From Macrostomum lignano (lineage: Eukaryota): a stretch of DNA of 57,864 nt. Each line of letters opens with the position of its first letter. The stretch's first letter is position 1. Both the position numbers and the translations under genes were made by a program. Under the pieces are notes generated by a model. It searched no databases, had not been told where the DNA came from, and saw only the letters and a list, made by a program, of their open reading frames with translations. The stretch covers positions 1 to 57,864 of the forward strand of contig NIVC01004150.1 of NCBI GenBank assembly GCA_002269645.1, given 5' to 3'. This document shows positions 2,545 through 44,546 of the stretch, piece by piece.

Positions 2545-4109
<1,565 letters not shown>

Positions 4110-4199
4110 TCAACCCATCATCATTTAAGTTCAGCTGGACATGCTCCAGATCCCTTGTAGCTTTCTCAGAAGCTGCTTTTAGCCCCAGTTTTCACATCC

Positions 4200-12041: not shown

Positions 12042-12072
<31 letters not shown>

Positions 12073-12777: not shown

Positions 12778-12889
12778 AGCGTCTGGAAAAATAATAAGCA
12801 ACAATTATAGCTCATGGCAATCGAGAGGAAACTAAGAAACTGAAGCCTTCAATAGGGGATCTGAGCATCTGAGAATAGATGCGTCTGAG

Positions 12890-26601: not shown

Positions 26602-29600
26602 CTAGTTCCTGTTCTCCAGCCACTCCAGAACCTTCACCAGCAGATCCCTGGCGATGCCAGAAGCCTCCTGCACCAGCCTCTTGGCCAACTCGATAGCGGC
26701 CTGCTTGCCGTGCTCAGCCAGCTCCCTCAGGATGGCCTTGATCTGCTCCATGTCGATACCGATGATGTCCAGGATGTAGGCGTCGTCGTTGCGGTTCTCC
26801 AGCCACTCCAGAACCTTCACCAGCAGATCCCTGGCGATACCAGAAGCCTCCTGCAGCAGTCTCTTGGCCAGCTCGATAGCAGCCTGCTTGCCGTGCTCAG
26901 CCAGCTCCCTCAGGATGGCCTTGATCTGCTCCATGTCGATACCGATGATGTCCAGGATGTAGGCGTCGTCGTTGCGGTTCTCCAGCCACTCCAGAACCTT
27001 CACCAGTAGATCCTTGGCGATGCCAGAAGCCTCCTGCAGCAGCCTCTTGGCCAGCTCGATAGCAGCCTGCTTGCCGTGCTCAGCCAGCTCCCTCAGGATG
27101 GCCTTGACCTCCTCGATGTTGATACCGATGATGTCCAGGATGTAGGCGTCGTCGTTGCGGTTCTCCAGCCACTCGAGGACACGGATGAGGATGTCCTTCA
27201 AAGCTCCCTGGGCCTCCTGCAGCAGTCTTTTGGCCAGCTCGATAGCAGCCTGCTTGCCGTGCTCAGCCAGCTCCCTCAGGATAGCCTTGACCTGCTCGAT
27301 GTCGATACCGATGATGTCCAGGATATAGGCGGACCTCTGACGCTCCAGGATCTCGAGCACCTTGATGAGGATGTCCTTCAGGGCTCCTTGAGCGTGCTCC
27401 AGCATCCTCTTGGCCAGCTCGATAGCGGCGTCCATACCGTTCTGAGCGAGCTCCCTCAGGATGGCCTTGACCTCTTCGATGTTGATGCCGATCAGATCAA
27501 GAATGAACGGGCTCTTGTGAACTCCGAGCTTTCCCTCGATCTCCAGAATAATGATCTTCTCCATAAGTCTCATGAGCATATCCTTCATAATTCCCTGAGC
27601 TCCATCCATGAGCTCTTGAACCAGTTTCTTCGCAGCCTCAGTACCCTCCTCTCTTAGAGTCTCCATAATGCGATCGATGATAGACTGCTCATCAAAAGCC
27701 TGAATAGATTCGTTGCGATTCTCGAGCCACTCCAGAACCTTCACCAGTAGATCTTTGACAATGCCAGAAGCCTCCTGGATCATCTTCTTGGCCAGCTCAA
27801 TAGCGGCCTGCTTGCCGTGCTCAGCCAGCTCCCTCAGGATAGCCTTGACCTCCTCGATGTTAATACCGATGATGTCCAGGATGTAGGCGTCGTGGTTGCG
27901 GTTCTGCAGCCACTCGAGTACCCGAATGAGGATGTCCTTCAGAGCACCTTCGACGACCTCCTGCAGCAGCTTCTTGGCCAGCTCGATAGCGGCCTGCTTG
28001 CCGTGCTCAGCCAGCTCCCTCAGGATGGCCTTGACCTGCTCGATGTCGATACCGATGATGTCCAGGATGTAGGCGGACCTCTGACGCTCCAGGATCTCGA
28101 GCACCTTGATGAGGATGTCCTTAAGAGCTCCTTGGGCTTCCTCCAGCATCCTCTTGGCCAGCTCGATAGCGGCCTGCTTGCCGTGCTGAGCGAGCTCCCT
28201 CAGGATGGCCTTGACCTCCTCCACGTCGATGCCGATCAGGTCCAGGATGAAAGCGTCGTCGTTGCGGTTCTCCAGCCACTCCAGAACCTTCACCAGCAGA
28301 TCCCTGGCGATGCCAGAAGCCTCCTGCAGCAGTCTCTTGGCCAGCTCGATAGCGGCCTGCTTGCCGTGCTCAGCCAGCTCCCTCAGGATGGCCTTGATCT
28401 GCTCCATGTCGATACCGATGATGTCCAGGATGTAGGCGTCGTCGTTGCGGTTCTCCAGCCACTCCAGAACCTTCACCAGCAGATCCTTGGCGATGCCAGA
28501 TGCCTCCTGCAGCAGTCTCTTGGCCAACTCGATAGCGGCCTGCTTGCCGTGCTCAGCCAGCTCCCTCAGGATGGCCTTGATCTGCTCCATGTCGATACCG
28601 ATGATGTCCAGGATATAGGCGGACCTCTGACGCTCCAGAATTTCGAGGACCTTGATGAGGATGTCCTTCAGGGCTCCTTGAGCGTGCTCCAACATCCTCT
28701 TGGCCAGCTCGATAGCGGCGTCCATACCGTTCTGAGCGAGCTCCCTCAGGATGGCCTTGACCTCCTCGACGTCAATGCCGATCAGGTCGAGAATGAATGC
28801 GTCGTCATTGCGGTTCTCCAGCCACTCGAGGACACGGATGAGGATGTCCTTCAGAGCTCCCTGGGCCTCCTGCAGCAGCCTCTTGGCCAGCTCGATAGCG
28901 GCCTGCTTGCCGTGCTCAGCCAGCTCCCTCAGGATGGCCTTGACCTGCTCGATGTCGATACCGATGATGTCCAGGATGTAGGCGGACCTCTGACGCTCCA
29001 GGATCTCGAGCACCTTGATGAGGATGTCCTTCAGAGCTCCCTGAGCGTGCTGCAACATCTTTTTGGCCAGCTCGATAGCGGCCTGCTTTCCGTTCTGAGC
29101 GAGCTCCCTCAGGATGGCCTTGACCTCCTCCACGTCGATGCCGATCAGGTCCAGGATGAAAGCGTCGTCGTTGCGGTTCTCCAGCCACTCCAGAACCTTC
29201 ACCAGTAGATCCTTGGCAATGCCAGAAGCCTCCTGCACCAGCCTCTTGGCCAGCTCGATAGCGGCCTGCTTGCCGTGCTCAGCCAGCTCCCTCAGGATGG
29301 CCTTGATCTGCTCCATGTCGATACCGATGATGTCCAGGATGTAGGCGTCGTCGTTGCGGTTCTCCAGCCACTCCAGAACCTTTACCAGCAGATCCTTGGC
29401 GATGCCAGAAGCCTCCTGCAGCAGCCTCTTGGCCAGCTCGATAGCGGCCTGCTTGCCGTGCTCAGCCAGCTCCCTCAGGATGGCCTTGATCTGCTCCATG
29501 TCGATACCGATGATGTCCAGGATGTAGGCGGACTTCTGACGCTCCAGAATTTCGAGGACCTTGATGAGGATGTCCTTCAGGGCTCCTTGAGCGTGTTCCA

Positions 29601-29808
29601 GCATCCTCTTGGCCAGCTCGATAGCGGCGTCCATACCGTTCTGAGCGAGCTCCCTCAGGATAGCCTTGACTTCCTCCACGTCGATGCCGATCAGATCCAG
29701 GATGAAGGCGTCATCCTGCAGTTCACCCTTCGCTACCTCCTGCAGAGGAGCGGCCTGGGCAAAGGCGAATGCCAAAGAGGCGAGTCCTAGTAGAATCAAG
29801 AGTTTCAT
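26602..29808 (-). CDS. Secreted tandem-repeat polyprotein 1 (1068 aa, intronless): signal peptide + short pro-segment + 17 helical ~60-aa units (16 canonical, 1 divergent)
   Basis: Uninterrupted 3207-nt ORF starting MKLLILLGLASLAFAFAQA (n-h-c signal peptide, likely cleavage AQA/AP). Units are (F/Y)ILD(L/I)IGID..VLE(W/I)LE, with extreme G/C-ending codon bias. TATA box lies 48-55 nt upstream of the ATG. No gene name recognised. Confidence 0.92.
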   Translation of the reverse strand: MKLLILLGLASLAFAFAQAAPLQEVAKGELQDDAFILDLIGIDVEEVKAILRELAQNGMDAAIELAKRMLEHAQGALKDILIKVLEILERQKSAYILDIIGIDMEQIKAILRELAEHGKQAAIELAKRLLQEASGIAKDLLVKVLEWLENRNDDAYILDIIGIDMEQIKAILRELAEHGKQAAIELAKRLVQEASGIAKDLLVKVLEWLENRNDDAFILDLIGIDVEEVKAILRELAQNGKQAAIELAKKMLQHAQGALKDILIKVLEILERQRSAYILDIIGIDIEQVKAILRELAEHGKQAAIELAKRLLQEAQGALKDILIRVLEWLENRNDDAFILDLIGIDVEEVKAILRELAQNGMDAAIELAKRMLEHAQGALKDILIKVLEILERQRSAYILDIIGIDMEQIKAILRELAEHGKQAAIELAKRLLQEASGIAKDLLVKVLEWLENRNDDAYILDIIGIDMEQIKAILRELAEHGKQAAIELAKRLLQEASGIARDLLVKVLEWLENRNDDAFILDLIGIDVEEVKAILRELAQHGKQAAIELAKRMLEEAQGALKDILIKVLEILERQRSAYILDIIGIDIEQVKAILRELAEHGKQAAIELAKKLLQEVVEGALKDILIRVLEWLQNRNHDAYILDIIGINIEEVKAILRELAEHGKQAAIELAKKMIQEASGIVKDLLVKVLEWLENRNESIQAFDEQSIIDRIMETLREEGTEAAKKLVQELMDGAQGIMKDMLMRLMEKIIILEIEGKLGVHKSPFILDLIGINIEEVKAILRELAQNGMDAAIELAKRMLEHAQGALKDILIKVLEILERQRSAYILDIIGIDIEQVKAILRELAEHGKQAAIELAKRLLQEAQGALKDILIRVLEWLENRNDDAYILDIIGINIEEVKAILRELAEHGKQAAIELAKRLLQEASGIAKDLLVKVLEWLENRNDDAYILDIIGIDMEQIKAILRELAEHGKQAAIELAKRLLQEASGIARDLLVKVLEWLENRNDDAYILDIIGIDMEQIKAILRELAEHGKQAAIELAKRLVQEASGIARDLLVKVLEWLENRN

Positions 29809-29855
29809 TGTTGTCTTGGATGTGGTTTGTGAATAAATGGAGCTGAAAAGACTTG

Positions 29856-29863
29856 TATTTATA
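29856..29863 (-). promoter_or_regulatory. TATA box (TATAAATA) of polyprotein 1
   Basis: Perfect consensus, with a pyrimidine/A initiator-like CCATTT about 25 nt downstream and a short 5' UTR ending ACAACA-ATG. Confidence 0.7.
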
Positions 29864-31302
29864 CGTTTTTGAAACCGAAACCGCATGACAGGTTCTCAAG
29901 TTTTGAGTAGGCGTTGTGGAATGAAATTGTTGCTCATTCTGTTTTTGTAAGCGTTTTAAGTCACGAGTTGTCGCGTGTTGGAAGACGCGTTGCAGTGACT
30001 TTTTAATGATAAGGAATTTTCTGCTTTCCTTTCTAGCTCGTACTTCCCCCTCCCTGCTTTGTAAAATCTGGGTGGATGGTGTGAGCTATTTTGCACTGAA
30101 GCTGAATGTGAAAATACTTTTAATAGCTAAAATTTGTATGTTATGCGACGAACAATGTCCTTCAGCTTGTACGAAAAAATCACTAGTAAGCAATACCAGT
30201 AAGCAATGTAACCGCCAATCCAAATTGTTGTCAGCTGATTTTTAGTTAAAATAATCTCGATTATTGCGCATTAATATTGGAATTTTGATTTAGAACCGTA
30301 TCTAATTTTTTGTAAACAATGTCTTTTCTATTGGCGTTAAATTTATTTGCTGCCATTAACCTGCATGTATATACGAGCGTATCTTAGCTCAGTTGAGCCA
30401 GAGTATGAGAAAAGTATAGTAGATACGACAATTGTCAGTTTATCAGTGTGGTATTTGCCACTTGGCATCTCTATCAAATTCAGTAGCAAAATTTCGCATT
30501 GTTCTTTTTAATCTTTTATAAATCATTGGATCTGTCATTGGCAATAGAGTAAATAGTTAAAGTAGTTAAGCATATTCTCGGGCAAGGAAACTTTCTAAAT
30601 GCTTCTTTTAGTTACAAAATAATCCTTTTTTTGCACATGTTAGACTGCTCAATAACCTACGTGATCCCAGAACGATTTGACCAGATGTAAAAGACGTAAA
30701 TACCGCATGTTTAGTACATTCGTACCTTGTTACGAGTATCTAGTAGATTTTGACGCGACCTGGGGACTTGGGGGGGGGGGGTAATTCTCATGGACCCTGG
30801 CTCCGGTTCAATGCATTCATTCATTTCAAATTACTTTATGGGAAATTTTAGAAGAGTAAAGCTGTGAATCAAGCCGGTAGATTTTTTTATTCGGCAGTCT
30901 ACTTATATGGAAGCTTAGGGTGCAGAATATTGTAGCAATGGCGGAAAACTTTCGATGAAAATATTTATTTTTATTTGAAAATTCCACCTAACCACAAACA
31001 CAGCCTCGGTCGGACAAAAACTAAATTGAAACGCAAATTTTGTTGCTACAAGGTCTGAGCGCAGCACAGGAATTATAAAAATTGGCCAGGTTAATACATG
31101 CTCAGAAGTCTTCAAGCAGAGCTCGCAATAGCATCAGGGGTTGGAATGAATTTGTTGATTGAAGAAATCCCAGCTAAAGCAAAGCAGGTTAACGCACGCC
31201 AAATGTTCACAACACGTCCGTACACTTCAACGGGAGTTGACGCTAATTTTACAGTTTTTTTGTCAGCAGAAACACAAAAAACAATCTTAAAAATACCAGC
31301 CA

Positions 31303-31550
31303 CTAGCTAATTCTATTCTGGCCAATGCCGACCGCCCGGTTGTCATCCGCTGCTAGCCTGTCGGACTCTTCCCAGCGCTCTCTGACCACCGCCCGGAGTC
31401 GCTGTGTGTCAACGCGTGCCTGGCCAGCTTCGGCCAGCAGACGGGCCAGTCGGACTTCGCTGTCGCGCAGTTGCAGGTGGTTCGCGACTCGATTCTCTTG
31501 CTGGGCGGACTGCACGGCAGACTGCTGAGGCGGTCGCGCGCGACCCGCTA
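31303..31550 (-). other. Orphan exon-like coiled-coil coding segment of unknown gene
   Basis: GC-rich island in an AT-rich background; preceded by AAATTTTAG. Reads (A)GRARPPQQSAVQSAQQENRVANHLQLRDSEVRLARLLAEAGQARVDTQRLRAVVRERWEE...; no partner exons identified. Confidence 0.4.
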
Positions 31551-32232
31551 AAATTTGAAGAATTATGGGAAGAATTTTTGCCTTCTAATTAAAAAAACTA
31601 TAAGCATTCTATTGGAAGCTCACACCCAGAGCCCAGTGAGAGAGCTAATTTCCTTTGAAAGCGACGCAAATTAAGCGAAAAACACAGAAATCTTAATGCT
31701 GAGAAACTCAGGAAGAGGGGGAATAAATCCGAAATGGCTGGTGCTTCAAACAGCTGTCGCAAAACCGTCAGTTTTGCGTGATCGACAAGTTATAATGCCT
31801 TAACTTTTCGTTCTCTTTGTACATCCGTCGTGCAAATTGAAGGCTAAACTGATGGTGATGAAAATGAGCCTTAAATCCTGGCTAGATAATGATAAGTTAG
31901 ATAATTCATTTCACGAAACATAAAAACGTCAATCAATATGCCGACGTCGGTTATGGCTCAAAAACCAAATACCGCAGTACTCTCTTATAGTTTTCCAGAC
32001 AAGCAGAAGAACGGCAATGTGTGCAATTCTGCCAAGCGTCTGTAATTGTTCTAAAAAATAAAATTGTGCGCTTGAGAAAGTCACAAACACGCTTGATCTG
32101 TAAAAACTTCAACTAGGCTTTTGTGTCTGGGATTCTGGGAACCCATCCAGAATGCTAGGTTTCCGGCATCACATACTCTATAGACTGAGGGTTTGCATCC
32201 TTTTTGCATTTTAACATTAAAATCGGACAAAT

Positions 32233-32495
32233 CAGTGGCGTCGCCACCGGGGGGACATGTTCCCCCAGTAAAAGCTATGGGAGGACATACCAATCCCCCA
32301 CCCCACCTTGGGACCCGTTATGGAAATCAAAAAAAATTTTCTTCAGGACGCCAAAATGAGTGCCTGTGGCGCCAAAATGAGCGCTGACAACACCAATTCT
32401 CATAATAATGGACACGTAGGAATTTAGTCATGTACGTGTACATGTTGAATTCTTGGCTTTGTCGCTCCACCATAAAATCCATGGCGATGCCCCTG
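32233..32495. mobile_element. Non-autonomous hAT-type MITE, copy 1
   Basis: TIRs CAGTGGCGTCGCCA / TGGCGATGCCCCTG; 8-bp TSD GGACAAAT / GGACAGAT. The internal sequence is shared with 36325-36655. Confidence 0.85.
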
Positions 32496-33299
32496 GGACA
32501 GATGTCTACAAAAAGCTCTCTTTGTACTTTGCGGCGATAAAAAAATTCAGATTCATTAGCTACTACTTAAAATAGTAGCTACAACAGACAGACCATCATC
32601 AAGCTCTGAGTTTTGTCAAAGACTGAGAGCCAGCATAATTCAATGAAGCGTCAATAAATGTGGATTCAATTCAATTTATAATTCATAATTCAATAAATGG
32701 ATACCGTCTGACTGGAGCATAATTCGGTTCAAGTTCGGATGTCCAATTCTAGGCTCTTTTGCCTTTAAGTCGAGTTTCCCGGTCAGATCAATACTTGAGG
32801 TTATCATACAAAGCAATGGCAAATGTGGCAAACTGCAGTAACTATACGTGTCAGAGGGCAAGCCTGACGATTTTGTGTCTCATACCACTTCGCTTATCAG
32901 TTGCGCATGTTCCTTACATGTAATAAGTGAGCCATTGACAAGTTTCCAATATACAAAAACTATGGCGTGAAGTTTTTGCATAATATTTTAAGCGGGGAAG
33001 AATTCACGTCCTCGAGCATTAGCGTTTAGCGTGCTAGCGCACCCGTTCCAGTACATGTTGTACTGTAAATCGCATTTTACTACATGTATGCATGCGGCAC
33101 CATTCAAGGACAAGAGCTACCTTTTCATGCCAAAAGTAATAGGATTTTATATACTTTTGAGATAGGCCACTCATTGAATTCTAAGAAGCCAGAGAATCTC
33201 ATGTGAATTTGGCGAAAGCACCGGTTGTTAAACTACTGAACTCAATTTAACGAGCGTATATATGCATTGTTATCGTAGTTTAATCGCATTCAGAAAATA

Positions 33300-33570
33300 T
33301 ACTCAGCAACATTGAAAAGTCGCCACTCTATGCGCCAATGAGCAATTTCTCTTGGACTATTCTGAAATAAACTCTGAAACTGAGGCGTAGCTTTAATCCA
33401 TCTAACCCTCACACACCGCGATCCCCCGACTTCATTCCTCAACTCAAGTCTGCCGTGGCGTAGCTAAGTTGCGTCACTCGCAAAGATTGAGAGACTACCT
33501 GCACTCTAGAAAGTGACGACCACAGACGAAATCTTCTGTGATGGCGACTTTTCAATGTTGCTGCAGAGTA
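33300..33570. mobile_element. MITE with TA target duplication (Tc1/mariner/pogo-type ends)
   Basis: Perfect 22-bp inverted repeat CAGCAACATTGAAAAGTCGCCA (33304) / TGGCGACTTTTCAATGTTGCTG (33542-33563); termini TA|TACTC...GAGTA|TA. Confidence 0.75.
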
Positions 33571-34511
33571 TACTTTTAAAACGTGACGAAAACTATGAAT
33601 ACAAGCCGTGTCAACCAGTCTAGCATGTCAAGCGTGACAAAACCGTTTACAAGCTTGTTCGTCATTTTCTTTCGTGCTCTCGCAGATCTGACAGCTTTTG
33701 CTTCCAAACAGACTTTTCCGACTTTAGTCGCTGCCTCAACTGCAAGCGCATTCGTACCATCGTCACACCCTCCGTTCTTGGACACACGCATCTCAAAGTT
33801 AGATAGCCATGCTCATGTATGAAAGAATCCTTCATCCGAAGGCCATGCTTATTTTCAGTTGAATAACAAAACAACGTCGATGTCCAAAAAGCTATTTAAT
33901 TTAAAGCTCAGTACTACTGGTAGGTTTTTTGCCAAATCAAACAACTCACGGAATTTGTCCTGTCGCGACTTTCTAAATCGTTTCTAAGTTCATCTGCAGT
34001 TGTCTATGTTTACTCTGTTTTCTTTCCCTCTCTAGTCTAGTTCAATCTTTTTACTTTTATCTCTCTCCCTTGCTGCCTTCTGATTGGCTCTTCGATCTCC
34101 CCTTTTTCAAGTCGCACACTCCACCCCTCCTTGTCTTATCTTGAACTCAACCCCTCCCCCCCCTTAGTTTGACATAAATACATGTATACCCGTTTAGGCC
34201 CTGTACCCCACTTGCAGCTATTTTTGGTGTTCAACTCTATGAAAATCGCCCGCCGAGGTTTGCCCGCAATGCTTTTTTATACATTTAGCCATGCGGTAGA
34301 TTTTTTCTACATTGCCCCCCAGTACTTAGAAAATCTTAAGACAAATAATGTACACTCCCCGCCAATTTTACAGCACAAGCATCGCCGAACGGGCAGAATT
34401 GCCTCACCGCAGGTTTTGGGACGCTACCGAGGATGTTGCACCATGGTGTCCACATCCCATTTGCAATTGCTATTATTATGTGTATATATCTCGCCCATTT
34501 CAATTTCAATC

Positions 34512-34815
34512 GGGGTTGTAGCTTAGTGCTTAGTGGACTCACGACTGAAAGGTCGGGGGTTCTATTCTCGGCCTCATTCGGAACAATTTGTGTCCTTGAG
34601 AAAGACGCTTAACTCTGCATTGCTTCAGTTCACCCAGCTGTAAAATGGGTGCCAGCATTAGCTGGGGCAATTGAAAGTGTGTGTGTGACGACCCCCAGTC
34701 CTTGGACTGAACAGCCGTACGCAGCCTTCAGATGTGCCCGCAATAGCTGCGGCTGAGCTGTCGGTTGCACATCTGCCCATTTAGCAAGTGTAATCGAATA
34801 TTACTAATAATTATT
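34512..34815 (+). mobile_element. tRNA-derived SINE with CORE-like central domain
   Basis: Head GGGGTTGTAGCTTAGTG..GGTTCTATTCTC (A/B boxes). Body TGTGTCCTTGAGAAAGACGCTTAAC..CTTCAGTTCACCCAGCTGTAAAATGGG resembles the MIR/CORE consensus. AT-rich tail. Confidence 0.75.
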
Positions 34816-34824
34816 ACAATTATT

Positions 34825-37406
34825 TTAATTATACTGCGAGATATCTACCCGATCGTCAATATCTAATCTTGAAACTGAAAAAGCAACTCATAAAGATATG
34901 TCGTACTTGACAGCTTGCCTGTTTGGCGTAGAATTTTGTCGACCGGCAAAGAACGCTGCTTTGACTGTTGCTGCTGCTTGCGCTGCAGATAGTGCACCGG
35001 ATCCTGCAAACGCGAGCTTCTGAATTGCTCCTTCTGCTGATCACTGCCAGTCAGATTAAAATTGGTATTCGAAGAGTTCGACTGCTGCTTCTGCGGCTGC
35101 TGCAGTTGACTGCCTGCAGAGACGCCTGTAACTGCATGAGAAGCCGTCGGCGATTCGACAGGACCGCCGCCTTGAGCTGCCAGCCCGTTTCGAAGCTCAG
35201 TCAGCATGCGTAGTGCGTCGTCAACAGATCGACCGACTGGCATGTCGTTGATGGTCACCTGGCAGATTGTCTTGTTTCGGTCAATCAGAAAGGTGCCTCT
35301 GTGCAGAAGCGAGTACGAAAGAAATATCGTGTACGAAATATAAAAGGGAAATGTAAGGAATATAGAGTGGAAAATAAGCAATGCTTTCTACTCAATGAGA
35401 TGACTTTTTTGAGTAGACAAACTTTATCTTGCATGTTGGAACTCCATCAAGTAGTGACGGTTATCTAACAGGTTGAGAACTCCAACGAGCAGGGTAAGTA
35501 TAGCTAGGGGGAGGGTAGCCCAGTTGTCCAGCGCGGTGCTCTGATGTGCCAGCGACCTAGGCTCGATTCCAAGTGCAGTCACATTAATTTTTGGGCTAAA
35601 CTGGAATCTTGGTTTGGCTCTGCTCGTGCAATTAACGCCATTAAGGACCAACCTCCCAAGGCGCAGTGAAGTGTACATGCCTAACGATAAATAAAGTTAG
35701 GGCCGCTGTGCAATCCTGTGTGAGTGTGTGCCTGTGCGTATGACTGCGTACGAATCCGCACGCTTGTGTGCCTGCTCAGGGGAGTCGGCGGAATGGGCGG
35801 AATGCCTCTCGCCGGTTGTGTGACAATGTCGCTTGAAGTGCGCCAGGGTGCACACAGCCCCTGCTCTAATAAAATTGTTAAATATTTCTAATGGTCCTTG
35901 CTCTGTGCATGCAAGAATGTTAATGAGATTCAACAGACACTTTCATTTATTTCATTTTGCTCATTTTTCAGTTGGTTTAAATTTGTCTGCACAGTCGATT
36001 GTAACAAGTGGCGCAGCCACATGCATACCTGTAGGCAGCGCCGCTAGCCGCAAGAACACCGTACGCCCTTGAGATCTCGTGCGACCTGTCGCTCAGCAGG
36101 ACGATGGACTCGGCATTGCTGCCGGCTCCCAGGCCCCGTTCAGCTTTTGGCGCCTTCAACCAGGCCAGGTGAGTGTACACCGAGTCAGTGGAGCAGCACA
36201 CAATGTTGCAGCTTTGCGCAGCGAATTCGGAGAACTTTTCCGTGAATTGCACTATTTCGGTTGGGCAGACGAATGTGCTGGAATGTTTAGACATATAGCA
36301 TATACTATTATTAATAATAATATTCAGGCACGTCGCCACCGGATAGGATGGGAGGGGGACATGTCCCCCCCCCGATAAAATCTCTGAGGGGAACATGCCA
36401 ATGCTTTGGCGCCTTCGGCGCTAAAATGAGTGCCTTCGGCGCTAAAATGAGTGCCTGCGGCGCTAAAATAAGTGCCTTCGGCGCTAAAATGAGTGCCTGC
36501 GGCGCTAGAAGGAATGCCTGCGGCGCTAAAAGAAATGCTTGCGGCGTCAAAATGAGTGCCTGCGGCGCCAAAATGAGTGCCAAAATTTAGTGGACATGTG
36601 CATGTTGAATTCTTGGCTTTGTCTCCCGAACATAAAATCCATGGCGACTCCCCTGATAATATTATTATTAAGTGTACACGTCGAGGATGATAATTTTGAT
36701 AGTGTATAATATTAGAAAAAGCAAAAAATAAATAAAATGACAGAAAACATAAATATAAGGTTAGTAAATAAAGACATTTTTTGAGATGATACTGCATGGT
36801 GAACGCACTTTAGGTTCAGTATTATAAAGTCTACACAAAAGTTCCTACGACAGGACATTTGCCACAGGATTCACTCAGAAACACTTAAACTAAAGTTGAA
36901 ATACGTCATTTAATCAGCTGTAGTCTGGCTTGTGGGTGCGCGTGCACTTAGATGTGCACGTCTGGCTGGTTTGGGGGTTGGGGTTTAGCGCTGCAGCGTC
37001 TGCGTGCTTAGGGTGGTACACCCACCCAACTTTGGCATTAAATATATTGGCGTGAGCCAGTGAGGTCTCCTCACGTTTTGTTATTCACTGCAATTCAACC
37101 CACGGTCTTACACAGCAATGATTGTGCATTTATTGGACGCGTTTTAAAGAATGGCCCTTACTCCCCACAAAGTGGTACTTGTACTCCCAATTACTCCATG
37201 TAATTTTAACTGTGTTCTCGGATTTTAATAATTCAAATTGGCACAACTAAGAAGTGAACTTACAAGTCAGCCGGGTAGAACACTAGTACAAGATAATCGG
37301 CACCTTTGAGGGCCTCGTCCAGAGTCAAATCGACAATTTCACCGCGACGAACAGCCTGGCTGAGCAACGGCGGCGCCGTGTCTCCGGGAGCAAGATGTGC
37401 TGGCAT
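34825..37406 (-). CDS. Peroxiredoxin (AhpC/Prx1-type) with peroxidatic Cys but no C-terminal resolving-Cys motif: exons 37406-37264, 36277-36029, 35298-(34920 or 34863), with a possible terminal exon 34875-34825 after a 44-nt GC-AG intron
   Basis: MPAHLAPGDTAP..YLVLVFYPADF|TFVCPTEIVQF..STDSVYTHLAW..LLSDRSHEISRAYGVL..AYR|GTFLID..QVTINDMPVGRSVDDALRML. Phase-2 junctions TT|GTAAGT..CCAG|C and AG|GTATGC..CACAG|A. The 3' end is uncertain. Confidence 0.9.
35507..35695 (+). mobile_element. Second tRNA-derived SINE-like element in peroxiredoxin intron 2
   Basis: GGGGAGGGTAGCCCAGTTG (A box) and GGCTCGATTCC (B box) with tRNA-like spacing but a poor cloverleaf, followed by unique body and an A-rich end. 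Confidence 0.55.
36325..36655. mobile_element. Non-autonomous hAT-type MITE, copy 2, in peroxiredoxin intron 1, with an internal 21-bp tandem expansion
   Basis: TIRs CAGGCACGTCGCCA / TGGCGACTCCCCTG; perfect 8-bp TSD ATAATATT; internal (GGCGCTAAAATGAGTGCCTKC)n of about 8 copies. Confidence 0.88.
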
Positions 37407-38017
37407 GCCTTCCTGATGCAATAAATATGTGTATTAATATCCAAATATTTATATAGTTTTGAATTGCCCAATCTTACTAAGCTAACAGCGCTTTGACTGG
37501 CACCCAAAATGACATCCTATTTGTCTATTTGTCTTAATTGAAAACGAGAGAGAAGATTAATTAGTACAAATAGTATGACCATGGCCACAGACAGAATGTT
37601 AGCGTTCCAAAGCGTGTGTACTCAGCCAAGCAAAATGCCAACATCTCTGCTCTACCCGATCTTACACTGCGGCGAGCCTCTCTGACCCGCAGAAGTTGCA
37701 GAAGACTGCGGACTCCATGTCTACAGATTACTCAAGTTTGAAAGTTGGTGAAGGTCTTAAGATCCCAAACCCCAATATTTTTAATAAAATTATTGATACT
37801 TCAAATGAAACGTGAATTACAGAAGTATTCGGAACCTAAATTTAATGGCATCTAGATTAGAATGATCTGCAATTTGGCATCCGGGATCCAAATTCAAAAC
37901 GCCAAAATTAAACTTGATGCGTCGTAAAACACGTTACGCTATGGCACAAAAAACCTAATTCCAACCAATTGTATTTATTTTAAGTACTACAAATTATCTA
38001 TATATCTACTCGTACAT

Positions 38018-38612
38018 GGGGTCTACGACAAGTGACCGCCACAATTTGACCGCCGACAATTTCGCCACTGGCAGTTTCACTGCCGGATTTTTGGGACCAA
38101 CAATTTGATCGCCCTACATGTATTTTCATTTATATTCATTGACATTTTGAATTGTCAAAATGTTATTAACTACCTCTTGCTGGTTCAATGCATTTTGCCC
38201 TAGCCCCTAAGCCAAATAATTAAAAAAGATCTGATGCTCAGAAAAGGCAACAAATTATACTTCATTTTCAATTGACGGCACTTCAACATTGAAACTCTAC
38301 AGTCTATTTGTAAGTTTTACAGTTTACAGTATAATTCTAAGGAATGGGATCTAAGAAATATTCTACCAGAAAATGTTCTGGTAGAACAAAATATCTTCCT
38401 CGAGAAACCCTTCCTTTGAGTATAGTATAGTCATTATGCAGTTTTTAAACTATCTAGAAATGTCACTTCCTCAAAAAGTCTCAAGTACATAATAACAGCT
38501 AGCATGTTCACAGTTTTAAAGAATGACCAACCTCGCCGCAGAAAATAGGACGATCAAACTTCTGGGGTCCCAAATATTCCGGTCAAATTGTGGAGGTCAA
38601 TTGCTGGTCTCC
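38018..38612. mobile_element. Degenerate element with long TIRs (Mutator-like MITE)
   Basis: Left GACCGCCACAATTTGACCG..TTTGGGACC..TTTGATCGCCCT matches the reverse complement of right AGGACGATCAAA..GGTCCCAAAT..CGGTCAAATTGTGGAGGTC. No clean TSD, so the superfamily is tentative. Confidence 0.55.
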
Positions 38613-38639
38613 ATCTACATTTGTCATGGATTCGTCTTT

Positions 38640-39620
38640 TATAAAGAAACTTCTGACATCACGATTCCGAATAAGTCAGTGCTCAGAATTTTCGACGGGA
38701 CATCAAGAGTTCGGGAGGGAGCTGATTCTGGATTCGACAAGATCTGGATCTTGAAATCTCGAAAACTTCTAAAGATTCAAGAAGACTTCTTATCTTCTAC
38801 TTGAAGTCTGCCCTACTTGCCTTGGGGAATCGCCGTTCCTCAGCCATGTACATATCAGTAGCGCCAGCTAAATTTGCATTGCTACTTCACTCGTTAATAT
38901 CAAGTTGTTTAAACCACTTAGATGCCTCCAACAAGGTGTCCTTAAGGTGGATCCACGAACACTTGGGCGACCCCGGCAACGAGTTGGCCCATCGCCGATA
39001 CTAGTGAAGACTGGCTCGACCAGGCCTTTTACTGGCCCCCTGCACTTGGCCCTTTTGTCACCACTCGGATCAACCAGTGGGTGGCTTCAAAGCACAGGGA
39101 GAGGTGGGCTAACGCCCCCCGACTACCGGCAATCCCGCGCGGCTGTCCCATGTACTTCCCCCTCCCTCCGCAGGGCCCTGCTTGGACGCAACCGCAGGGA
39201 CGTCAGGGAGGTGACCATGGCCTGGCCTTTTTTGCCAGGCATCGCTACCTCCAGGGATGCCCTTTTTACCTCTCCGGTGTCGAGAATGCGGAGCACTTCA
39301 TCTGTGAATGCCCTGCCTTTACTCAGGACAGGCTCACTTACCTCGGCAAAAACCCGGACCTCTCCGACGTTTTCAGGCCCGAGAATCTCTGCCAGCTCGT
39401 CCGCTACCTAAGGGCTACCGGGCAATAGATCATCAACCTCCTGGACTCTCCAGAGAGGGACCACGCTGCGTAGACCGGCACCACCGGTCTCCCTGCGTGT
39501 CGCCCTGCGTGGATCTCCCTGTGTGACACCCTGTACCAGCTGCTCGTGGCCGCCAGGGGTTGGCGGGAGCTAAGTCAATAAATTTGTTTAGGCCTTTGTG
39601 CCGCGCTATAAACCCCAACT
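38640..39620 (+). mobile_element. 5'-truncated, decayed non-LTR retrotransposon (I/Loa/Nimb-type): RNase H + C-terminal Cys/His knuckle + 3' UTR
   Basis: [29 protein letters not shown] (RNase H W-x3-H..GNE motif); [26 protein letters not shown] (CCHC-type end of ORF2); several stops and frameshifts. Confidence 0.8.
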
Positions 39621-40467
39621 GAATTTCATTTGGAAAATCACGTCGCGTAAAAATTCTGAAAGCTATTCAATTTGACTAACATGTAGTGTGAGCATCTTTT
39701 GCGTGTATTTGTTAGTTAATTGATTGTATTAGTTTCTATATTGTTAATTATTATTTTGCTTCAATTTAGTCACGCGGTCTAATGTACTTTTTTTCTTGTT
39801 AGTTAAAATCTAAATTTGTAAACAGGTTAGAAGTCAGACGCCAATTCTGTGACTCAGCGGAGGGTTGAGTTTTTCTGCGAACCCCAGCTTTGCGCGGCAA
39901 GCCAATCAGAACCGGCCTGGACCCTGGCACGCGGCAAAATCCAAGTCTACCCGGCGCCGCGGGCACAGTGCAAATCAGCTTAGCGGGCGGCCGGCCAGAC
40001 GACCACCACCCGGCTTGAGGGGGGTGGTTTGAGGGTTTGACTCTGACTATATATGAAAGTGTGTTTGGCAATCGGATCTCACTTTTCCTTTTCCCTTTCT
40101 CGCTTCTGTTTTTCCGTCCCCGGTCTTGATTTTTGTCCCGGCTTTCCGGCCGCTTGCCCTTGTTTTGGTTCGCGCTTTGAGGCGTTTGAGTTCATCACCC
40201 CCGGTCCATATTTTTGTCCCCGCCCGACCGCTTCAGTCTTGTAGCGTAACGTCTACGGCAAACTTCTGTCTGAAGTCGTCGCTATCAAGCGCGGTTAGAT
40301 AGAGACTGTCGGATTTGACCAAGTACGAGATCTCGGCGTCCTTGCTCTTGGTGGCCGCCGTCAACTTGTGAAGCAGCAGTTAGATTAATCTCCTAAGCTA
40401 TGACATTCTTGTATTTCATACTGTCTGACAAGAGAATAAGTGTAAAAAGCAGAAAATAAGAATGCAA

Positions 40468-40572
40468 TTTTCGCGCCCATGGTTCCACAAAATTTCGCGC
40501 CAGACCCCCAGGATTCGCGCATTCGCGCCATTTTCGCGCCTGGCGCGAATTCGCGCCTGAATCACACCACTG
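40468..40572. mobile_element. DNA-transposon terminus with clustered TTCGCGC subterminal motifs
   Basis: Ends in GAATCACACCACTG (reverse complement CAGTG..., a hAT-like terminus); 7 TTCGCGC copies in about 95 bp; the other end was not found. Confidence 0.5.
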
Positions 40573-40830
40573 ATTGAGTCATCAAAGGCTGCTATGACAG
40601 AAAAGTGGAATGCTGTGTCACTAGCCTATATCCGCAACACTTGCAGAACTTTCCAAAGATGCCTTCAGAGAGCCATTGAAGCTTGAGGTGGCTACTTTGA
40701 GTAATATTAACTACTGCAAGTCATGAACACATGCAAAAGGTTTTAGTAGCCAAAAATATACAAACTGAATAATAATACTTTTTATGTTGCTTCTAATTTA
40801 CTGAAAAGACTTTTGCAACACCCACTCGTA
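40573..40830 (+). mobile_element. Tc1/mariner 3' relic (transposase C-terminus + TIR)
   Basis: KAAMTEKWNAVSLAYIRNTCRTFQRCLQRAIEA*GGYFE* matches the W..i....i...c..f..Rl.avi.a.Gg.fE C-terminal motif; ends CTTTTGCAACACCCACTCG|TA. Confidence 0.75.
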
Positions 40831-42216
40831 CGTGGCCTCGATCCTGAGGGCCTCAGTGTCACACTGAAGGGCAGTGCTGATAGAATTTAGTCAGTGCTCC
40901 GTTGAACGGTCAATTCGGCAGGGCTCTCGTTGAGTGTAGGTTCTGGTTTAGGCCAGGGGTTAGGAGTCTTCTCCGTGGTCGTGTTCGGTTTTTCTTCTTC
41001 AAGCTGAGATCTGCTTGCCATTGCGTAACTAAGTTATTATTAATCGTTTGTCTCGTTATCATTTTCCGCTATTATCAGTTCGAAATTATCTGCGCCGCGA
41101 ATTGCATTGAAGCTTGTAACTTGAAGTAATCAAATTAAATCGTCTAGCCAATTATCAGTCTGTATCATATAGGATTATCACTCTCTAAATCTATTCGGTT
41201 CGTGTTCATCTGCGTTCTTCCTTTCCTTGTGCCGTACTGTGACTGTTGGAGAAAGACTGGTAGGACTCGCCGACCGGCGATAGGCAATTAGGGCCAATAG
41301 CTTTAAAATCTCCGAACGCTCCAAGTAGGTTTGTCTAGGGCCTAAATAATTGCTTATCGTGCATGCTATATACATTTATTGTATCTATCACAAACAGTAG
41401 ACTAGAGCAAAAATATCATGCGAGCGTAGTTTTTCTAACATTTAAAACCGGGAGATTGTGCACAATCATTATGCATGGAAATTTGGTTTGTAATTTTTTA
41501 TTTTTTTCTGCGGGAGATTTTGCTGTCACGTCAATGATCGCATCAGCAATCCCATTTGGCAGATTTTAAAAGTGCGGGTTCTTTTAGGTCTCAGGGCCCG
41601 AAATCTATCTGAAAATCTGCCGTAGATACCAACAGTAGAACAACAGTTTTTGTTCTCAAGAAATAAAAAAATGCATCGAATGTGCATTATTCTTAAAACG
41701 ATTTGTGTACATTATTTTAGTACATGTTTATTGTAAACATCCTTAAATTTAAAAATGAAATATTGCGTATTTGACTAAGTTAAAACGTTTGAATCATTGT
41801 TATAATAATCGTAAATACCTCTGACTTACACAGTATAACCCTAATCTGTGTAACTATTGCTACTCGCACAATTCAAACTATGCGTGCTATTTGTCCATAT
41901 ACTAAAATGGTTTGTCGGCATCTATGACTGTCGGTATGTGATCGATTTCAGAAAGAACGACTCAACCGATATTCTTCGAACTTGCACCATTCGGTCAAAC
42001 ATTTTCCCGTGCCGGTACATGTGTCTTGGCTATTTGTTTGAACAAAAGATTCTCCTCAAAGAAATTGTGCGGAGGCAGTTCAGAGGCAGTCACAACATTC
42101 CAACTGACTGCGAAATCACTAGAACGCATATACACGAGTGAATTAATTGTGAGTAGGAGTAAATAAATAAGCGTATATTTCAGTCAAAAACAGCTCAGTC
42201 ACGAAATCATGGAAAT

Positions 42217-44490
42217 CTAGCTGCTGTTCTCCAGCCACTCCAGAACCTTCACCAGCAGATCCCTGGCAATGCCAGAAGCCTCCTGCACCAGCCTCTTGGC
42301 CAGCTCGATAGCAGCCTGCTTGCCGTGCTCAGCCAGCTCCCTCAGGATAGCCTTGACCTGCTCCATGTCGATACCGATGATGTCCAGGATGTAGGCATTG
42401 CGGTTCTCCAGCCACTGAAGGACCTTGATGAGGACGTCCCTCAGTTCTCCTTCGGCATCCTGCAGGAGCTTTTTAGTCAGCCTGATGGCGGCCTCCTTTC
42501 CGGCGTTAGCCAGCTCCCTCAGGATAGCCTTGACCTCATCAATGTCAATATCGATGTTGTCCAGGATGTAGGCGTCGTCGTTGCGGTTCTCCAGCCACTC
42601 GAGGACACGGATGAGGATGTCCTTCAGAGCTCCCTGGGCCTCCTGCAGCAGTCTCTTGGCCAGCTCGATAGCGGCCTGCTTGCCGTGCTCAGCCAGCTCC
42701 CTCAGGATGGCCTTGACCTGCTCGATGTCGATACCGATGATGTCCAGGATATAGGCAGACCTCTGACGCTCCAGGATCTCGAGCACCTTGATGAGGATGT
42801 CCTTAAGAGCTCCTTGGGCTTCCTCCAGCATCCTCTTGGCCAGCTCGATAGCGGCCTGCTTGCCGTGCTGAGCGAGCTCCCTCAGGATAGCCTTGACCTC
42901 CTCCACGTCGATGCCGATCAGGTCCAGGATGAAAGCGTCGTCGTTGCGGTTCTCCAGCCACTCCAGAACCTTCACCAGTAGATCCTTGGCAATGCCAGAA
43001 GCCTCCTGCACCAGCCTCTTGGCCAGCTCGATAGCGGCCTGCTTGCCGTGCTCAGCCAGCTCCCTCAGGATAGCCTTGACCTGCTCGAGGTCGATACCGA
43101 TGATGTCCAGGATGTAGGCGTCGTCGTTGCGGTTCTCCAGCCACTCCAGAACCTTCACCAGCAGATCCTTGGCGATGCCAGAAGCTTCCTGCAGCAGTCT
43201 CTTGGCCAGCTCGATAGCGGCCTGCTTGCCGTGCTCAGCCAGCTCTCTCAGGATAGCCTTGACCTGCTCCATGTCGATGCCAATGATGTCCAGGATGTAG
43301 GCGGACCTCTGACGCTCCAGGATCTCGAGCACCTTGATGAGGATGTCCTTCAGAGCTCCTTGAGCGTGCTCCAACATCCTCTTGGCCAGCTGGATAGCGG
43401 CGTCCATACCGTTCTGAGCGAGCTCCCTCAGGATGGCCTTGACCTCCTCGACGTCAATGCCGATCAGGTCGAGAATGAACGCGTCGTCATTGCGGTTCTC
43501 CAGCCACTCGAGGACACGGATGAGGATGTCCTTCAGAGCTCCCTGGGCCTCCTGCAGCAGTCTCTTGGCCAGCTCGATAGCGGCCTGCTTGCCGTGCTCA
43601 GCCAGCTCCCTCAGGATGGCCTTGACCTGCTCGATGTCGATACCGATGATGTCCAGGATATAGGCAGACCTCTGACGCTCCAGGATCTCGAGCACCTTGA
43701 TGAGGATGTCCTTAAGAGCTCCTTGGGCTTCCTCCAGCATCCTCTTGGCCAGCTCGATAGCGGCCTGCTTGCCGTGCTGAGCGAGCTCCCTCAGGATAGC
43801 CTTGACCTCCTCCACGTCGATGCCGATCAGGTCCAGGATGAAAGCGTCGTCGTTGCGGTTCTCCAGCCACTCCAGAACCTTCACCAGTAGATCCTTGGCA
43901 ATGCCAGAAGCCTCCTGCACCAGCCTCTTGGCCAGCTCGATAGCGGCCTGCTTGCCGTGCTCAGCCAGCTCCCTCAGGATAGCCTTGACCTGCTCGAGGT
44001 CGATACCGATGATGTCCAGGATGTAGGCGTCGTCGTTGCGGTTCTCCAGCCACTCCAGAACCTTTACCAGCAGATCCTTGGCGATGCCAGAAGCCTCCTG
44101 CACCAGCCTCTTGGCCAGCTCGATAGCGGCCTGCTTGCCGTGCTCAGCCAGCTCCCTCAGGATGGCCTTGACCTGCTCCATGTCGATACCGATGATGTCC
44201 AGGATGTAGGCGGACTTCTGACGCTCCAGAATTTCGAGGACCTTGATGAGGATGTCCTTCAGGGCTCCTTGAGCGTGTTCCAACATCCTCTTGGCCAGCT
44301 CGATAGCGGCGTCCATACCGTTCTGAGCGAGCTCCCTCAGGATAGCCTTGACCTCCTCCACGTCGATGCCGATCAGATCCAGGATGAAGGCGTCATCCTG
44401 CAGTTCACCCTTCGCTACCTCCTGCAGAGGAGCGGCCTGGGCAAAGGCGAATGCCAAAGAGGCGAGTCCTAGTAGAATCCAAAGCTTCAT
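42217..44490 (-). CDS. Secreted tandem-repeat polyprotein 2 (757 aa, intronless), paralogue of 26602-29808, with 12 helical units
   Basis: Uninterrupted 2274-nt ORF starting MKLWILLGLASLAFAFAQA; same units and linkers as polyprotein 1, ordered (A-B-B-A-C)x2-D-B. Confidence 0.92.
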   Translation of the reverse strand: MKLWILLGLASLAFAFAQAAPLQEVAKGELQDDAFILDLIGIDVEEVKAILRELAQNGMDAAIELAKRMLEHAQGALKDILIKVLEILERQKSAYILDIIGIDMEQVKAILRELAEHGKQAAIELAKRLVQEASGIAKDLLVKVLEWLENRNDDAYILDIIGIDLEQVKAILRELAEHGKQAAIELAKRLVQEASGIAKDLLVKVLEWLENRNDDAFILDLIGIDVEEVKAILRELAQHGKQAAIELAKRMLEEAQGALKDILIKVLEILERQRSAYILDIIGIDIEQVKAILRELAEHGKQAAIELAKRLLQEAQGALKDILIRVLEWLENRNDDAFILDLIGIDVEEVKAILRELAQNGMDAAIQLAKRMLEHAQGALKDILIKVLEILERQRSAYILDIIGIDMEQVKAILRELAEHGKQAAIELAKRLLQEASGIAKDLLVKVLEWLENRNDDAYILDIIGIDLEQVKAILRELAEHGKQAAIELAKRLVQEASGIAKDLLVKVLEWLENRNDDAFILDLIGIDVEEVKAILRELAQHGKQAAIELAKRMLEEAQGALKDILIKVLEILERQRSAYILDIIGIDIEQVKAILRELAEHGKQAAIELAKRLLQEAQGALKDILIRVLEWLENRNDDAYILDNIDIDIDEVKAILRELANAGKEAAIRLTKKLLQDAEGELRDVLIKVLQWLENRNAYILDIIGIDMEQVKAILRELAEHGKQAAIELAKRLVQEASGIARDLLVKVLEWLENSS

Positions 44491-44539
44491 GTTTGAAGTT
44501 TTCAAGTCGAGTGATGAGTCGTTTACGAAATTTGGTCCG

Positions 44540-44546
44540 TATATAT
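44540..44546 (-). promoter_or_regulatory. Probable TATA element (CATATATA) of polyprotein 2
   Basis: Same distance from the ATG (about 50 nt) as the TATA box of polyprotein 1, with an Inr-like ACTCATC about 25 nt downstream; the flanking sequence is otherwise unalignable. Confidence 0.5.

What the first reader, a model, noticed from the sequence alone, without database searches (positions are those of the whole stretch)
26602..44490. Two-gene family of secreted polyproteins made of Cys-free, amoebapore/saposin-like helical units
Seen: two intronless ORFs (26602-29808 and 42217-44490) with a signal peptide and 17 or 12 copies of a ~56-aa amphipathic three-helix core, e.g. YILDIIGIDMEQIKAILRELAEHGKQAAIELAKRLLQEASGIAKDLLVKVLEWLEN. 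Canonical units have no Cys or Pro, type B units have a net charge of about -3 with one His, and the TATA promoter plus extreme codon bias imply very high expression. Established knowledge: prosaposin and naegleriapore precursors are multi-saposin polyproteins; amoebapores are acid/His-activated membrane-permeabilising peptides; flatworms have cytolytic SAPLIPs. Inference: against amoebapore A as recalled from memory (GADKVKDYISSLCNKASGFIATLCTKVLDF), the unit segment GKQAAIELAKRLLQEASGIAKDLLVKVLEW aligns ungapped with 9/30 identities, and both Cys are replaced by Leu. One precursor may thus release a cocktail of disulfide-free lipid-binding or pore-forming peptides (digestive, mucus/rhabdite defence or lipid transport). 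I do not recognise this as a described family.
Basis: partly seen in the sequence, partly recalled or inferred. Interest (0 to 1): 0.9.

Follow-up and report, generated by a model that had tools for sequence, protein, structure and literature searches.

The report
Secreted tandem three-helix-bundle protein genes
Two neighbouring intronless genes of the flatworm Macrostomum lignano encode secreted, cysteine-free proteins made of 17 and 12 copies of a 60-residue three-helix module; the family is real and has no named relatives, but nothing links it to saposins or amoebapores.

Summary
On the minus strand, 26602-29808 (1068 aa, 17 units) and 42217-44490 (757 aa, 12 units) are intact ORFs. Each has a signal peptide and a 183-nt coding repeat. 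The mature proteins have no Cys. Codon bias is far stronger than in neighbouring genes, and a TATA box lies 55 nt before each ATG. Units are under purifying selection (pN/pS about 0.16).

The organism is Macrostomum lignano, where the genes are annotated only as hypothetical proteins. AlphaFold2 gives each unit as a small three-helix bundle, with low-confidence linkers between units.

The saposin/amoebapore reading fails every test I could run. There are no cysteines, no SapB or other Pfam match, no PDB sequence or profile match, and no saposin-like Foldseek hit.

An exhaustive search of 1.84 billion proteins, plus two profile searches, found only M. lignano copies and a few about 45%-identical fragments. 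Those fragments come from marine metagenomes and one unnamed assembly. They keep the signal-peptide-plus-units layout but carry introns.

Unit boundaries have no convertase motif, so polyprotein processing is unproven.

Best guess, by inference only: an abundant extracellular carrier of hydrophobic ligands, analogous to nematode polyprotein allergens and cestode HLBPs. This is an orphan family of moderate interest.

The parts
26602..29808 (-). g1: single-exon CDS, 1068 aa, made of a signal peptide, a 14-aa spacer and 17 units (mature about 118 kDa, pI 4.9, net charge -57)
   Evidence: NCBI models it with a spurious upstream extension (P0005).
29752..29808 (-). g1 signal peptide MKLLILLGLASLAFAFAQA (AQA|A cleavage by the -3/-1 rule)
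   Evidence: for the translation. The cleavage site is inferred; no predictor was available.
26605..29709 (-). g1 array of 17 units (183-nt period); pattern A B B A H A B B A o o o A H B B o
27511..27702 (-). g1 unit 12, the divergent unit (64 aa, 36% identical to a B unit, lacks the A-Y-I-L-D head)
29856..29863 (-). g1 TATA box TATAAATA, 55 nt upstream of the ATG
26559..26564 (-). g1 AATATA hexamer 38 nt after the stop codon, a candidate polyadenylation signal
   Evidence: The role is inferred; g2 has the same hexamer at the same distance.
42217..44490 (-). g2: single-exon CDS, 757 aa, made of a signal peptide, a 14-aa spacer and 12 units (mature about 83 kDa, pI 4.9, net charge -42)
   Evidence: The identical protein is on another contig of the assembly (P0007).
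44434..44490 (-). g2 signal peptide MKLWILLGLASLAFAFAQA
42220..44391 (-). g2 array of 12 units; pattern A B B A H A B B A H o o
44540..44545 (-). g2 TATA-like box TATATA, 55 nt upstream of the ATG. The transcript-based NCBI model P0007 starts about 25 nt downstream of it.
42174..42179 (-). g2 AATATA hexamer 38 nt after the stop codon, a candidate polyadenylation signal

Best explanation
Shown: g1 and g2 are paralogous single-exon genes of Macrostomum lignano. Each encodes a signal-peptide-bearing, acidic, cysteine-free protein made of 17 or 12 tandem modules of about 60 aa. Each module is predicted to be a small amphipathic three-helix bundle, preceded by a very hydrophobic, conserved N-terminal decapeptide (A-Y/F-I-L-D-x-I-G-I-D). 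Short polar linkers join the modules like beads on a string. The family is lineage-restricted and is not saposin-like.

Inferred: the TATA promoter, short UTRs, lack of introns, extreme codon bias and several genomic copies point to a very abundant secretory product.

Inferred mechanism: the protein works outside the cell as a bulk, multivalent carrier or solubiliser of hydrophobic or amphipathic ligands such as dietary lipids. It would be an apolipoprotein-like array in which a dozen or more 7-kDa helix-rich modules are covalently concatenated. Cestode HLBPs reach a similar assembly by non-covalent oligomerisation, and nematode polyprotein allergens (NPAs) by cleaving a repetitive precursor. 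It probably acts uncleaved, or is cut only by a non-convertase protease in the Asn/Asp-rich linkers.

My confidence in the identity layer is about 0.9. The figure given below is for the mechanism.
For: Anatomy: intact ORFs, signal peptides and 29 units.

Selection on the protein: pN/pS is 0.16-0.17 within unit types.

Expression signals: a TATA box at -55 and AATATA at +38 in both genes, although their flanks do not align. ENC is 30-34 against 45-55 in neighbours. The gene models come from a transcript-based annotation, and the average M. lignano gene has 4.9 introns (PMC5730564).

Structure: the AF2 unit model has three helices (residues 11-24, 26-39, 43-57), pLDDT 81.5. The four-unit model has pTM 0.29, with linkers below pLDDT 50.

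Amphipathicity: the helices have hydrophobic moments of 0.46-0.58 and are 50-60% hydrophobic. The N-terminal decapeptide is 70% hydrophobic with almost no moment. Overall, 51-53% of a typical A or B unit is hydrophobic.

Analogy: HLBPs are abundant, helix-rich 7-11 kDa subunits that form lipoprotein oligomers of 100-250 kDa in flatworms (PMC3439653). NPAs are intron-poor, tandemly repetitive helix-rich lipid binders (PMC3079579).

Conservation: relatives at about 45% identity keep the signal peptide, spacer and units, and the same core and turn residues (I7, K15, L18, L21, G25, A40, G42 are invariant).
Against: - No homology to any lipid-binding family. Pfam ApoLp-III, apolipoprotein, NPA, Taeniidae antigen and SapB models are all absent from the hit lists, and no PDB match was found.
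- A 45-residue three-helix bundle has no room for a ligand pocket unless it opens or packs with its neighbours.
- No expression site, proteomic data or ligand data could be found.
- M. lignano already has a gut-expressed ApoB homologue.
- Amphipathic helices with a hydrophobic core are equally expected for a plain stable bundle.
Confidence: 0.33

Rival explanations
1. A bulk structural or material protein of a secretion (mucus or rhabdite matrix, secretory-granule packing, egg or yolk component, or an elastic or anionic partner of the cationic adhesive proteins). The string of small bundles would provide solubility, extensibility or charge, and would bind no specific ligand.
For: Abundance signals. 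Strong acidity, net -42 and -57. Beads-on-a-string model. Unit number differs between copies, 17 in g1 against 12 in the homeologous P0001. This variation is typical of material proteins where dose matters more than exact length. Most lineage-specific secreted repeat proteins of invertebrates are structural (general knowledge).
Against: There are no Cys, no Ser/Thr-rich or Tyr/Gly-rich stretches, and only one N-glycosylation sequon per protein, so none of the usual cross-linking or gel-forming chemistry is present. Each unit is a conserved folded domain under purifying selection, with polar turn residues conserved in most units of distant relatives. That is more than a filler needs.
Confidence: 0.3
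2. One reading: a polyprotein precursor cut into about 7-kDa disulfide-free, saposin/amoebapore-like peptides that bind or permeabilise membranes, perhaps switched by His protonation.
For: Tandem near-identical units behind one signal peptide resemble known repetitive polyproteins. The helices are amphipathic. There is one His per unit in an E-H-G-K turn that most units and relatives keep. Linkers are Asn/Asp-rich, which an asparaginyl endopeptidase could in principle cut (inference).
Against: There are zero Cys, whereas SAPLIPs are defined by three disulfides. No SapB profile hit, and no PDB sequence or fold hit to any saposin-like protein. The model has three helices, not the four- to five-helix saposin fold. 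Units are acidic, -3 to -4. There is no convertase motif at unit boundaries. The regular K-R/K-K lies mid-helix 2 at pLDDT above 90 and is absent from half of the relatives' units.
Confidence: 0.07
3. Not a gene: a 183-nt satellite whose period happens to be a multiple of three and stays open by chance. M. lignano is full of minisatellites.
For: The first 18 kb of the window hold many minisatellites that create spurious long ORFs and spurious Pfam hits. The antisense strand of the arrays also carries ORFs of 171-463 aa.
Against: Only the minus strand is open across all 17 or 12 units, and it starts with a signal peptide right after a TATA box. pN/pS is 0.16. Relatives at 45% identity keep the same architecture and canonical phase-1 GT..AG introns. 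The gene models are transcript-based.
Confidence: 0.01

Closest known systems
Nematode polyprotein allergens/antigens (NPAs, e.g. ABA-1 of Ascaris): tandemly repetitive polyproteins
   Same: One signal peptide followed by a dozen or more near-identical helix-rich units in a single ORF. Few or no introns in the array. An abundant secreted product of a worm. Unit sequences are homogenised within the array (PMC3079579).
   Different: NPA units are about 15 kDa seven-helix domains with two conserved Cys, separated by K/R-X-K/R-R cleavage sites. Here the units are 7 kDa three-helix bundles without Cys and without such sites. There is no sequence, profile or fold similarity. NPAs are confined to nematodes.
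Cestode hydrophobic-ligand-binding proteins (HLBPs; Echinococcus antigen B, Taenia and Moniezia HLBPs)
   Same: Found in flatworms. Abundant and often secreted, with helix-rich subunits of 7-11 kDa that act as assemblies of a dozen or more subunits (100-250 kDa) (PMC3439653). One unit here is about 6.9 kDa, and the arrays are 83 and 118 kDa.
   Different: HLBP subunits are separate gene products that oligomerise non-covalently, whereas here the units are covalently concatenated. No Pfam hit to the Taeniidae antigen family or any other. HLBPs are described as cestode-specific. Lipid binding is untested here.
Bacterial surface proteins built from tandem three-helix bundles of about 58 aa (staphylococcal protein A type) and designed helical repeat proteins
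   Same: Cys-free three-helix modules of about 60 aa, repeated head to tail with short linkers. The only weak PDB matches are artificial alphaRep and designed helical repeat proteins, plus generic three-helix domains such as MIT and TPR.
   Different: All matches are insignificant (E>0.01 by sequence, E>=0.06 by fold, TM about 0.2 for the array). The likeness is one of architecture only, with no sign of common descent or shared ligands.
Saposin-like proteins (SAPLIPs: saposins, amoebapores, NK-lysin, naegleriapores)
   Same: Small helical secreted modules. Some SAPLIP precursors hold several modules in one chain.
   Different: The defining six-Cys pattern is absent. There is no SapB profile match, and no PDB sequence or fold match. 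The helix count differs, and the units are acidic.

Membership tests
SAPLIP / saposin B-type domain | Six conserved cysteines forming three disulfide bonds | tested here: not met
   No Cys anywhere in either mature protein, nor in the coding parts of the relatives P0003, P0004, P0008, P0010 and P0011. The few Cys in those called proteins lie in run-on translation past an exon end.
SAPLIP / saposin B-type domain | Match to the Pfam SapB_1/SapB_2 profiles or to a solved saposin-like protein by sequence | tested here: not met
   Single-unit hmmscan at E<=10 lists only 1-3 unrelated noise families. The nine family members share no family. PDB phmmer and profile searches at E<=10 return no saposin-like chain.
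SAPLIP / saposin B-type domain | Four- to five-helix saposin fold | tested here: not met
   The AF2 unit has three main helices plus a low-confidence 5-residue helix. Foldseek against PDB gives a best E of 2.7, with MIT- and TPR-like three-helix hits and no saposin-like entry.
SAPLIP / saposin B-type domain | Lipid or membrane interaction | not testable with these tools
   Needs material from the organism.
Tandemly repetitive polyprotein of the NPA type | Signal peptide followed by many near-identical units in one ORF | tested here: met
   17 and 12 units follow one signal peptide.
Tandemly repetitive polyprotein of the NPA type | Regularly spaced K/R-X-K/R-R cleavage motif between units | tested here: not met
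   Boundaries read ERQ[RK]S|AY and ENRNDD|AY. The only regular dibasic site (LAK[RK]) is inside helix 2 and is not conserved in relatives. The motif definition is from PMC3079579.
Tandemly repetitive polyprotein of the NPA type | Homology to the ABA-1 unit (about 15 kDa, seven helices, two conserved Cys) | tested here: not met
   No Pfam or PDB hit. The unit is 7 kDa, has three helices and no Cys.
Tandemly repetitive polyprotein of the NPA type | Post-translational release of single units | not testable with these tools
   Needs proteomic data on the native protein.
Cestode HLBP / antigen B family | Sequence homology to HLBP subunits | tested here: not met
   No Taeniidae-antigen or other Pfam hit. 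Exhaustive phmmer over 1.84 billion proteins found no cestode protein.
Cestode HLBP / antigen B family | Helix-rich 7-11 kDa subunit acting in assemblies of a dozen or more | tested here: inconclusive
   The size (about 6.9 kDa per unit) and helix content fit, but the units here are covalently linked. This is a resemblance in design, not membership.
Exchangeable apolipoproteins (ApoLp-III, ApoA/E) | Profile match to the family | tested here: not met
   Absent from all Pfam hit lists and from the PDB searches.

The most novel reading that the evidence does not exclude
A third, independently evolved class of helix-rich worm lipid carrier. The protein would be a covalently pre-assembled apolipoprotein, or a true tandemly repetitive polyprotein processed by a non-convertase route. 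It would be found in free-living macrostomid flatworms and their marine relatives, built from a three-helix module with no detectable relative in any described family.
Probability: 0.25. Interest if true: 0.6.

Novelty: new variant of a known kind. Interest (0 to 1): 0.4.

Why it matters
Tandemly repetitive secreted proteins made of folded, near-identical units are rare; the NPA literature names only filaggrins and NPAs as well-studied cases (PMC3079579). Here is a clean, previously unnamed example in a genetically tractable flatworm.

It shows strong signs of very high expression, varying unit number between genomic copies, and relatives in marine samples that differ in intron content.

If it carries lipids, it would bring the helminth theme of lineage-specific helix-rich lipid carriers into free-living flatworms. 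It would also show a covalent route to the oligomeric design of cestode HLBPs.

If it is a material protein, it is an unusual one, with no cross-linking chemistry. Either way the short, idealised, Cys-free three-helix module is an attractive target for structure determination.

The practical result of this check is negative for the headline claim. There is no evidence for a saposin- or amoebapore-like pore former.

Tried and rejected
Searches of known families and structures that found nothing:
- Pfam on whole proteins. The low E-values (GDH_HM3, WSLR, Ribosomal_L10 and others) are repeat-inflated sums of sub-threshold stretches. They vanish with single units and differ between family members.
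- PDB by sequence and by profile, which returned only artificial helical repeats at E>0.01.
- Foldseek of the unit and of four units against PDB. Nothing was significant, and the four-unit model is too uncertain (pTM 0.29) to interpret.
- A JGI metagenome scan with the family profile: 73 pattern matches, none confirmed.

Literature and expression look-ups that found nothing:
- Full-text searches for the gene ids, three unit peptides and the assembly accession GCA_041443025.
- Supplement searches for the gene ids in three M. lignano expression papers, and for unit peptide or DNA strings in the seminal-fluid in situ screen. I therefore have no tissue assignment.

Ideas considered and rejected:
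- Segmental duplication of the whole locus. The similarity between g1 and g2 starts at the ATG and ends near the stop codon, and the flanks do not align.
- Processing at the regular K-R in each unit. The site is mid-helix at high pLDDT, is not conserved in relatives, and would leave half-units at both protein ends.
- The upstream ATG or TTG starts listed by the ORF finder and used in the NCBI models. These extensions run over the TATA boxes and would bury the signal peptide.

The PDB and Pfam searches stand in for that test.

Full report
**Observation**

The two ORFs are real and lie on the minus strand. g1 is 26602-29808 (1068 aa) and g2 is 42217-44490 (757 aa). Each starts with MKL[L/W]ILLGLASLAFAFAQA, then a 14-residue spacer. 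g1 then has 17 units and g2 has 12, each 59-64 residues and mostly 60 or 61. Tandem Repeats Finder reports a 183-nt period with 17.0 and 11.7 copies.

The mature chains have no cysteine and only 2 and 1 prolines. Leu, Ile, Ala, Glu and Lys make up about 62% of residues. They are acidic: 118 and 83 kDa, pI 4.9, net charge -57 and -42. Each has only one N-glycosylation sequon.

Units fall into three main types:
- A, ending ..LEILERQ[RK]S.
- B, ending ..LEWLENRNDD.
- A hybrid, H.

These form a five-unit higher-order pattern, A-B-B-A-H. There are a few variants and one strongly divergent unit, g1 unit 12 at 36% identity.

**Is it a gene?**

The window is rich in minisatellites that create spurious ORFs, and the antisense strand of the arrays is partly open, so this needed testing. 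Four results say it is a gene:
- Only the minus strand is open across the whole array, and it opens with a signal peptide.
- Synonymous differences between units of one type far exceed non-synonymous ones (pN/pS 0.16-0.17).
- Relatives at about 45% identity keep the same protein architecture (below).
- The NCBI models come from a transcript-based annotation.

**Expression signals**

TATAAATA (g1) and TATATA (g2) both start exactly 55 nt upstream of the ATG. AATATA lies exactly 38 nt after each stop codon. The flanks do not otherwise align: g1/g2 similarity begins at the ATG and ends near the stop codon.

For g2, the transcript-derived model starts about 25 nt downstream of the TATA box. The in-frame upstream starts used by the ORF finder and by NCBI run across the TATA boxes and are spurious.

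Codon use is extreme. GC3 is 0.81-0.82 and ENC 30-34, with CTG, ATC, AAG and GAG at 74-98% of their codon families. Seven neighbouring ORFs have ENC 45-55. The repeats inflate these figures somewhat.

The genes have no introns, while the average M. lignano gene has 4.9. High expression in a secretory cell is a reasonable inference, but I found no direct data.

**Organism and copies**

The only named homologues are 'hypothetical protein' entries of Macrostomum lignano, assembly GCA_002269645.1.

The same gene order recurs on other contigs of this redundant assembly: GalNAc-transferase, g1, peroxiredoxin, g2, giant Ig/spectrin gene. One g1-type copy (P0001) has 12 units instead of 17. This may be real copy-number variation or an assembly collapse.

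**Structure**

AlphaFold2 on one unit, using the alignment of the window's 14 distinct units, gives three helices (residues 11-24, 26-39, 43-57). Mean pLDDT is 81.5. A short, low-confidence helix covers the N-terminal decapeptide.

Four units modelled together give the same bundles, linkers below pLDDT 50, and pTM 0.29. That reads as beads on a string with undefined mutual orientation.

The helices are amphipathic (hydrophobic moment 0.46-0.58). The N-terminal A-Y/F-I-L-D-x-I-G-I-D segment is 70% hydrophobic with almost no moment.

**Homology**

No known family matched:
- Pfam hits on the whole proteins are repeat-inflated noise. Single units give only 1-3 unrelated sub-threshold families each, and no family is shared by more than 3 of 9 family members.
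- PDB searches by sequence and by profile return only artificial helical repeat proteins at E>0.01.
- Foldseek finds only generic three-helix domains at E>=2.7 for the unit, and nothing meaningful for the array.
- No saposin-like protein, apolipoprotein, NPA or cestode antigen appears in any of these lists.

An exhaustive phmmer of g1 against 1.84 billion representative proteins found three proteins. One is an M. lignano fragment and two are metagenome fragments at 44-48% identity. Two profile iterations added four more short proteins and then converged.

The relatives come from ENA metagenome assemblies and from an unnamed NCBI assembly, GCA_041443025.1. One is from a marine biofilm sample, SAMN08714533 (PMC6355793).

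P0010 shows a signal peptide, a short acidic spacer and then the first unit, so the architecture is conserved. The AT-rich contigs L001 and L004 carry canonical phase-1 GT..AG introns of about 60-100 nt. These always sit at the same place, just after G-A-x-K at the start of helix 3. The M. lignano genes are intronless.

Seven positions are invariant across all of these: I7, K15, L18, L21, G25, A40 and G42. The A-Y-I head and the E-H-G-K turn are kept in most units.

**Interpretation**

What is shown is a lineage-restricted family of secreted, acidic, Cys-free proteins built from tandem three-helix modules.

Processing into single units is not supported by sequence. Boundaries lack the K/R-X-K/R-R motif that defines NPA-type polyproteins. 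The regular K-R/K-K lies mid-helix and is not conserved. The Asn/Asp-rich linkers leave a non-convertase cut possible, but type A linkers lack Asn.

I commit, at about one chance in three, to an apolipoprotein-like carrier of hydrophobic ligands. The grounds are:
- the high aliphatic content;
- the conserved exposed-looking hydrophobic head;
- a module size and number that mirror cestode HLBP assemblies;
- the NPA precedent for repetitive helix-rich lipid binders.

A ligand-free material or packing role is nearly as likely. The saposin/pore-former model is unlikely (about 0.07), because every defining feature that could be tested failed.

**Novelty**

The family is undescribed in the searchable literature and has no detectable link to a known family. 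The kind of thing it is, a secreted tandem-repeat helical protein, is known. I rate it a new variant of a known kind, of moderate interest.

**Limits and compliance**

I found no expression, proteomic or ligand data, and the source organism of the relatives is unidentified.

All letters used came from the window or from tool outputs.

Noticed in passing
window 1-18000 (e.g. 734-1768, 2904-3716, 4212-5251, 6213-7706, 8187-9857, 12893-13548, 17235-17979): A dense series of minisatellites with periods of 17-46 nt. They generate long spurious ORFs and spurious Pfam hits: 'Abdominal-A' for 6755-7906, and 'T4 gp5 C-terminal trimerisation' at E=1e-23 for 8168-9238. They also cause the extreme AT skew at 8-10 kb.
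   Followed up: partly
window about 31000-36800 (ORF 34863-35381 on the minus strand); L005:3552-8478: A multi-exon peroxiredoxin gene (AhpC-TSA/Redoxin in the homeologous contig) lies between the two repeat genes on the same strand. The same g1-peroxiredoxin-g2 order recurs on contig NIVC01003076.1.
   Followed up: partly
window 46557-57864 (+); L007:1-8228: Part of a giant gene with spectrin-like and many Ig I-set domains (6790 aa in the homeologous model), a titin/obscurin-like muscle protein. It lies next to g2.
   Followed up: no
window 11560-12804 (-) and 15172-16885 (-): A Hakai-type RING/zinc-finger E3 ligase ORF, and a polypeptide GalNAc-transferase with a ricin-B lectin domain. A 12-nt repeat (15729-16090) sits inside the transferase region.
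   Followed up: no
window 29809-29886 and 44491-44556: The public gene models (P0005, P0001, P0007) extend the proteins upstream of the signal-peptide Met, across or up to the TATA boxes. P0006 is modelled from an internal Met. The annotated N-termini of this family are unreliable.
   Followed up: yes
window 27076-29790 and 42325-44472 (+): The antisense strand of both arrays carries ORFs of 171-463 aa rich in Leu, Gln, Asp and Val. They are by-products of the GC3-rich repeat and not evidence of a second gene.
   Followed up: partly
P0009 (ENA contig of 506 nt); L002:283-723: Two metagenome contigs that carry relatives look chimeric or mixed. P0009 joins a Rho-N-like bacterial start to an 86%-identical unit. 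L002 has an opposite-strand ORF overlapping the end of the unit.
   Followed up: no
window 50657-50939 and 36411-36581: An (AGAAC)n microsatellite of 57 copies just upstream of the Ig-domain ORF, and a 21-nt repeat inside ORF 36324-36797.
   Followed up: no
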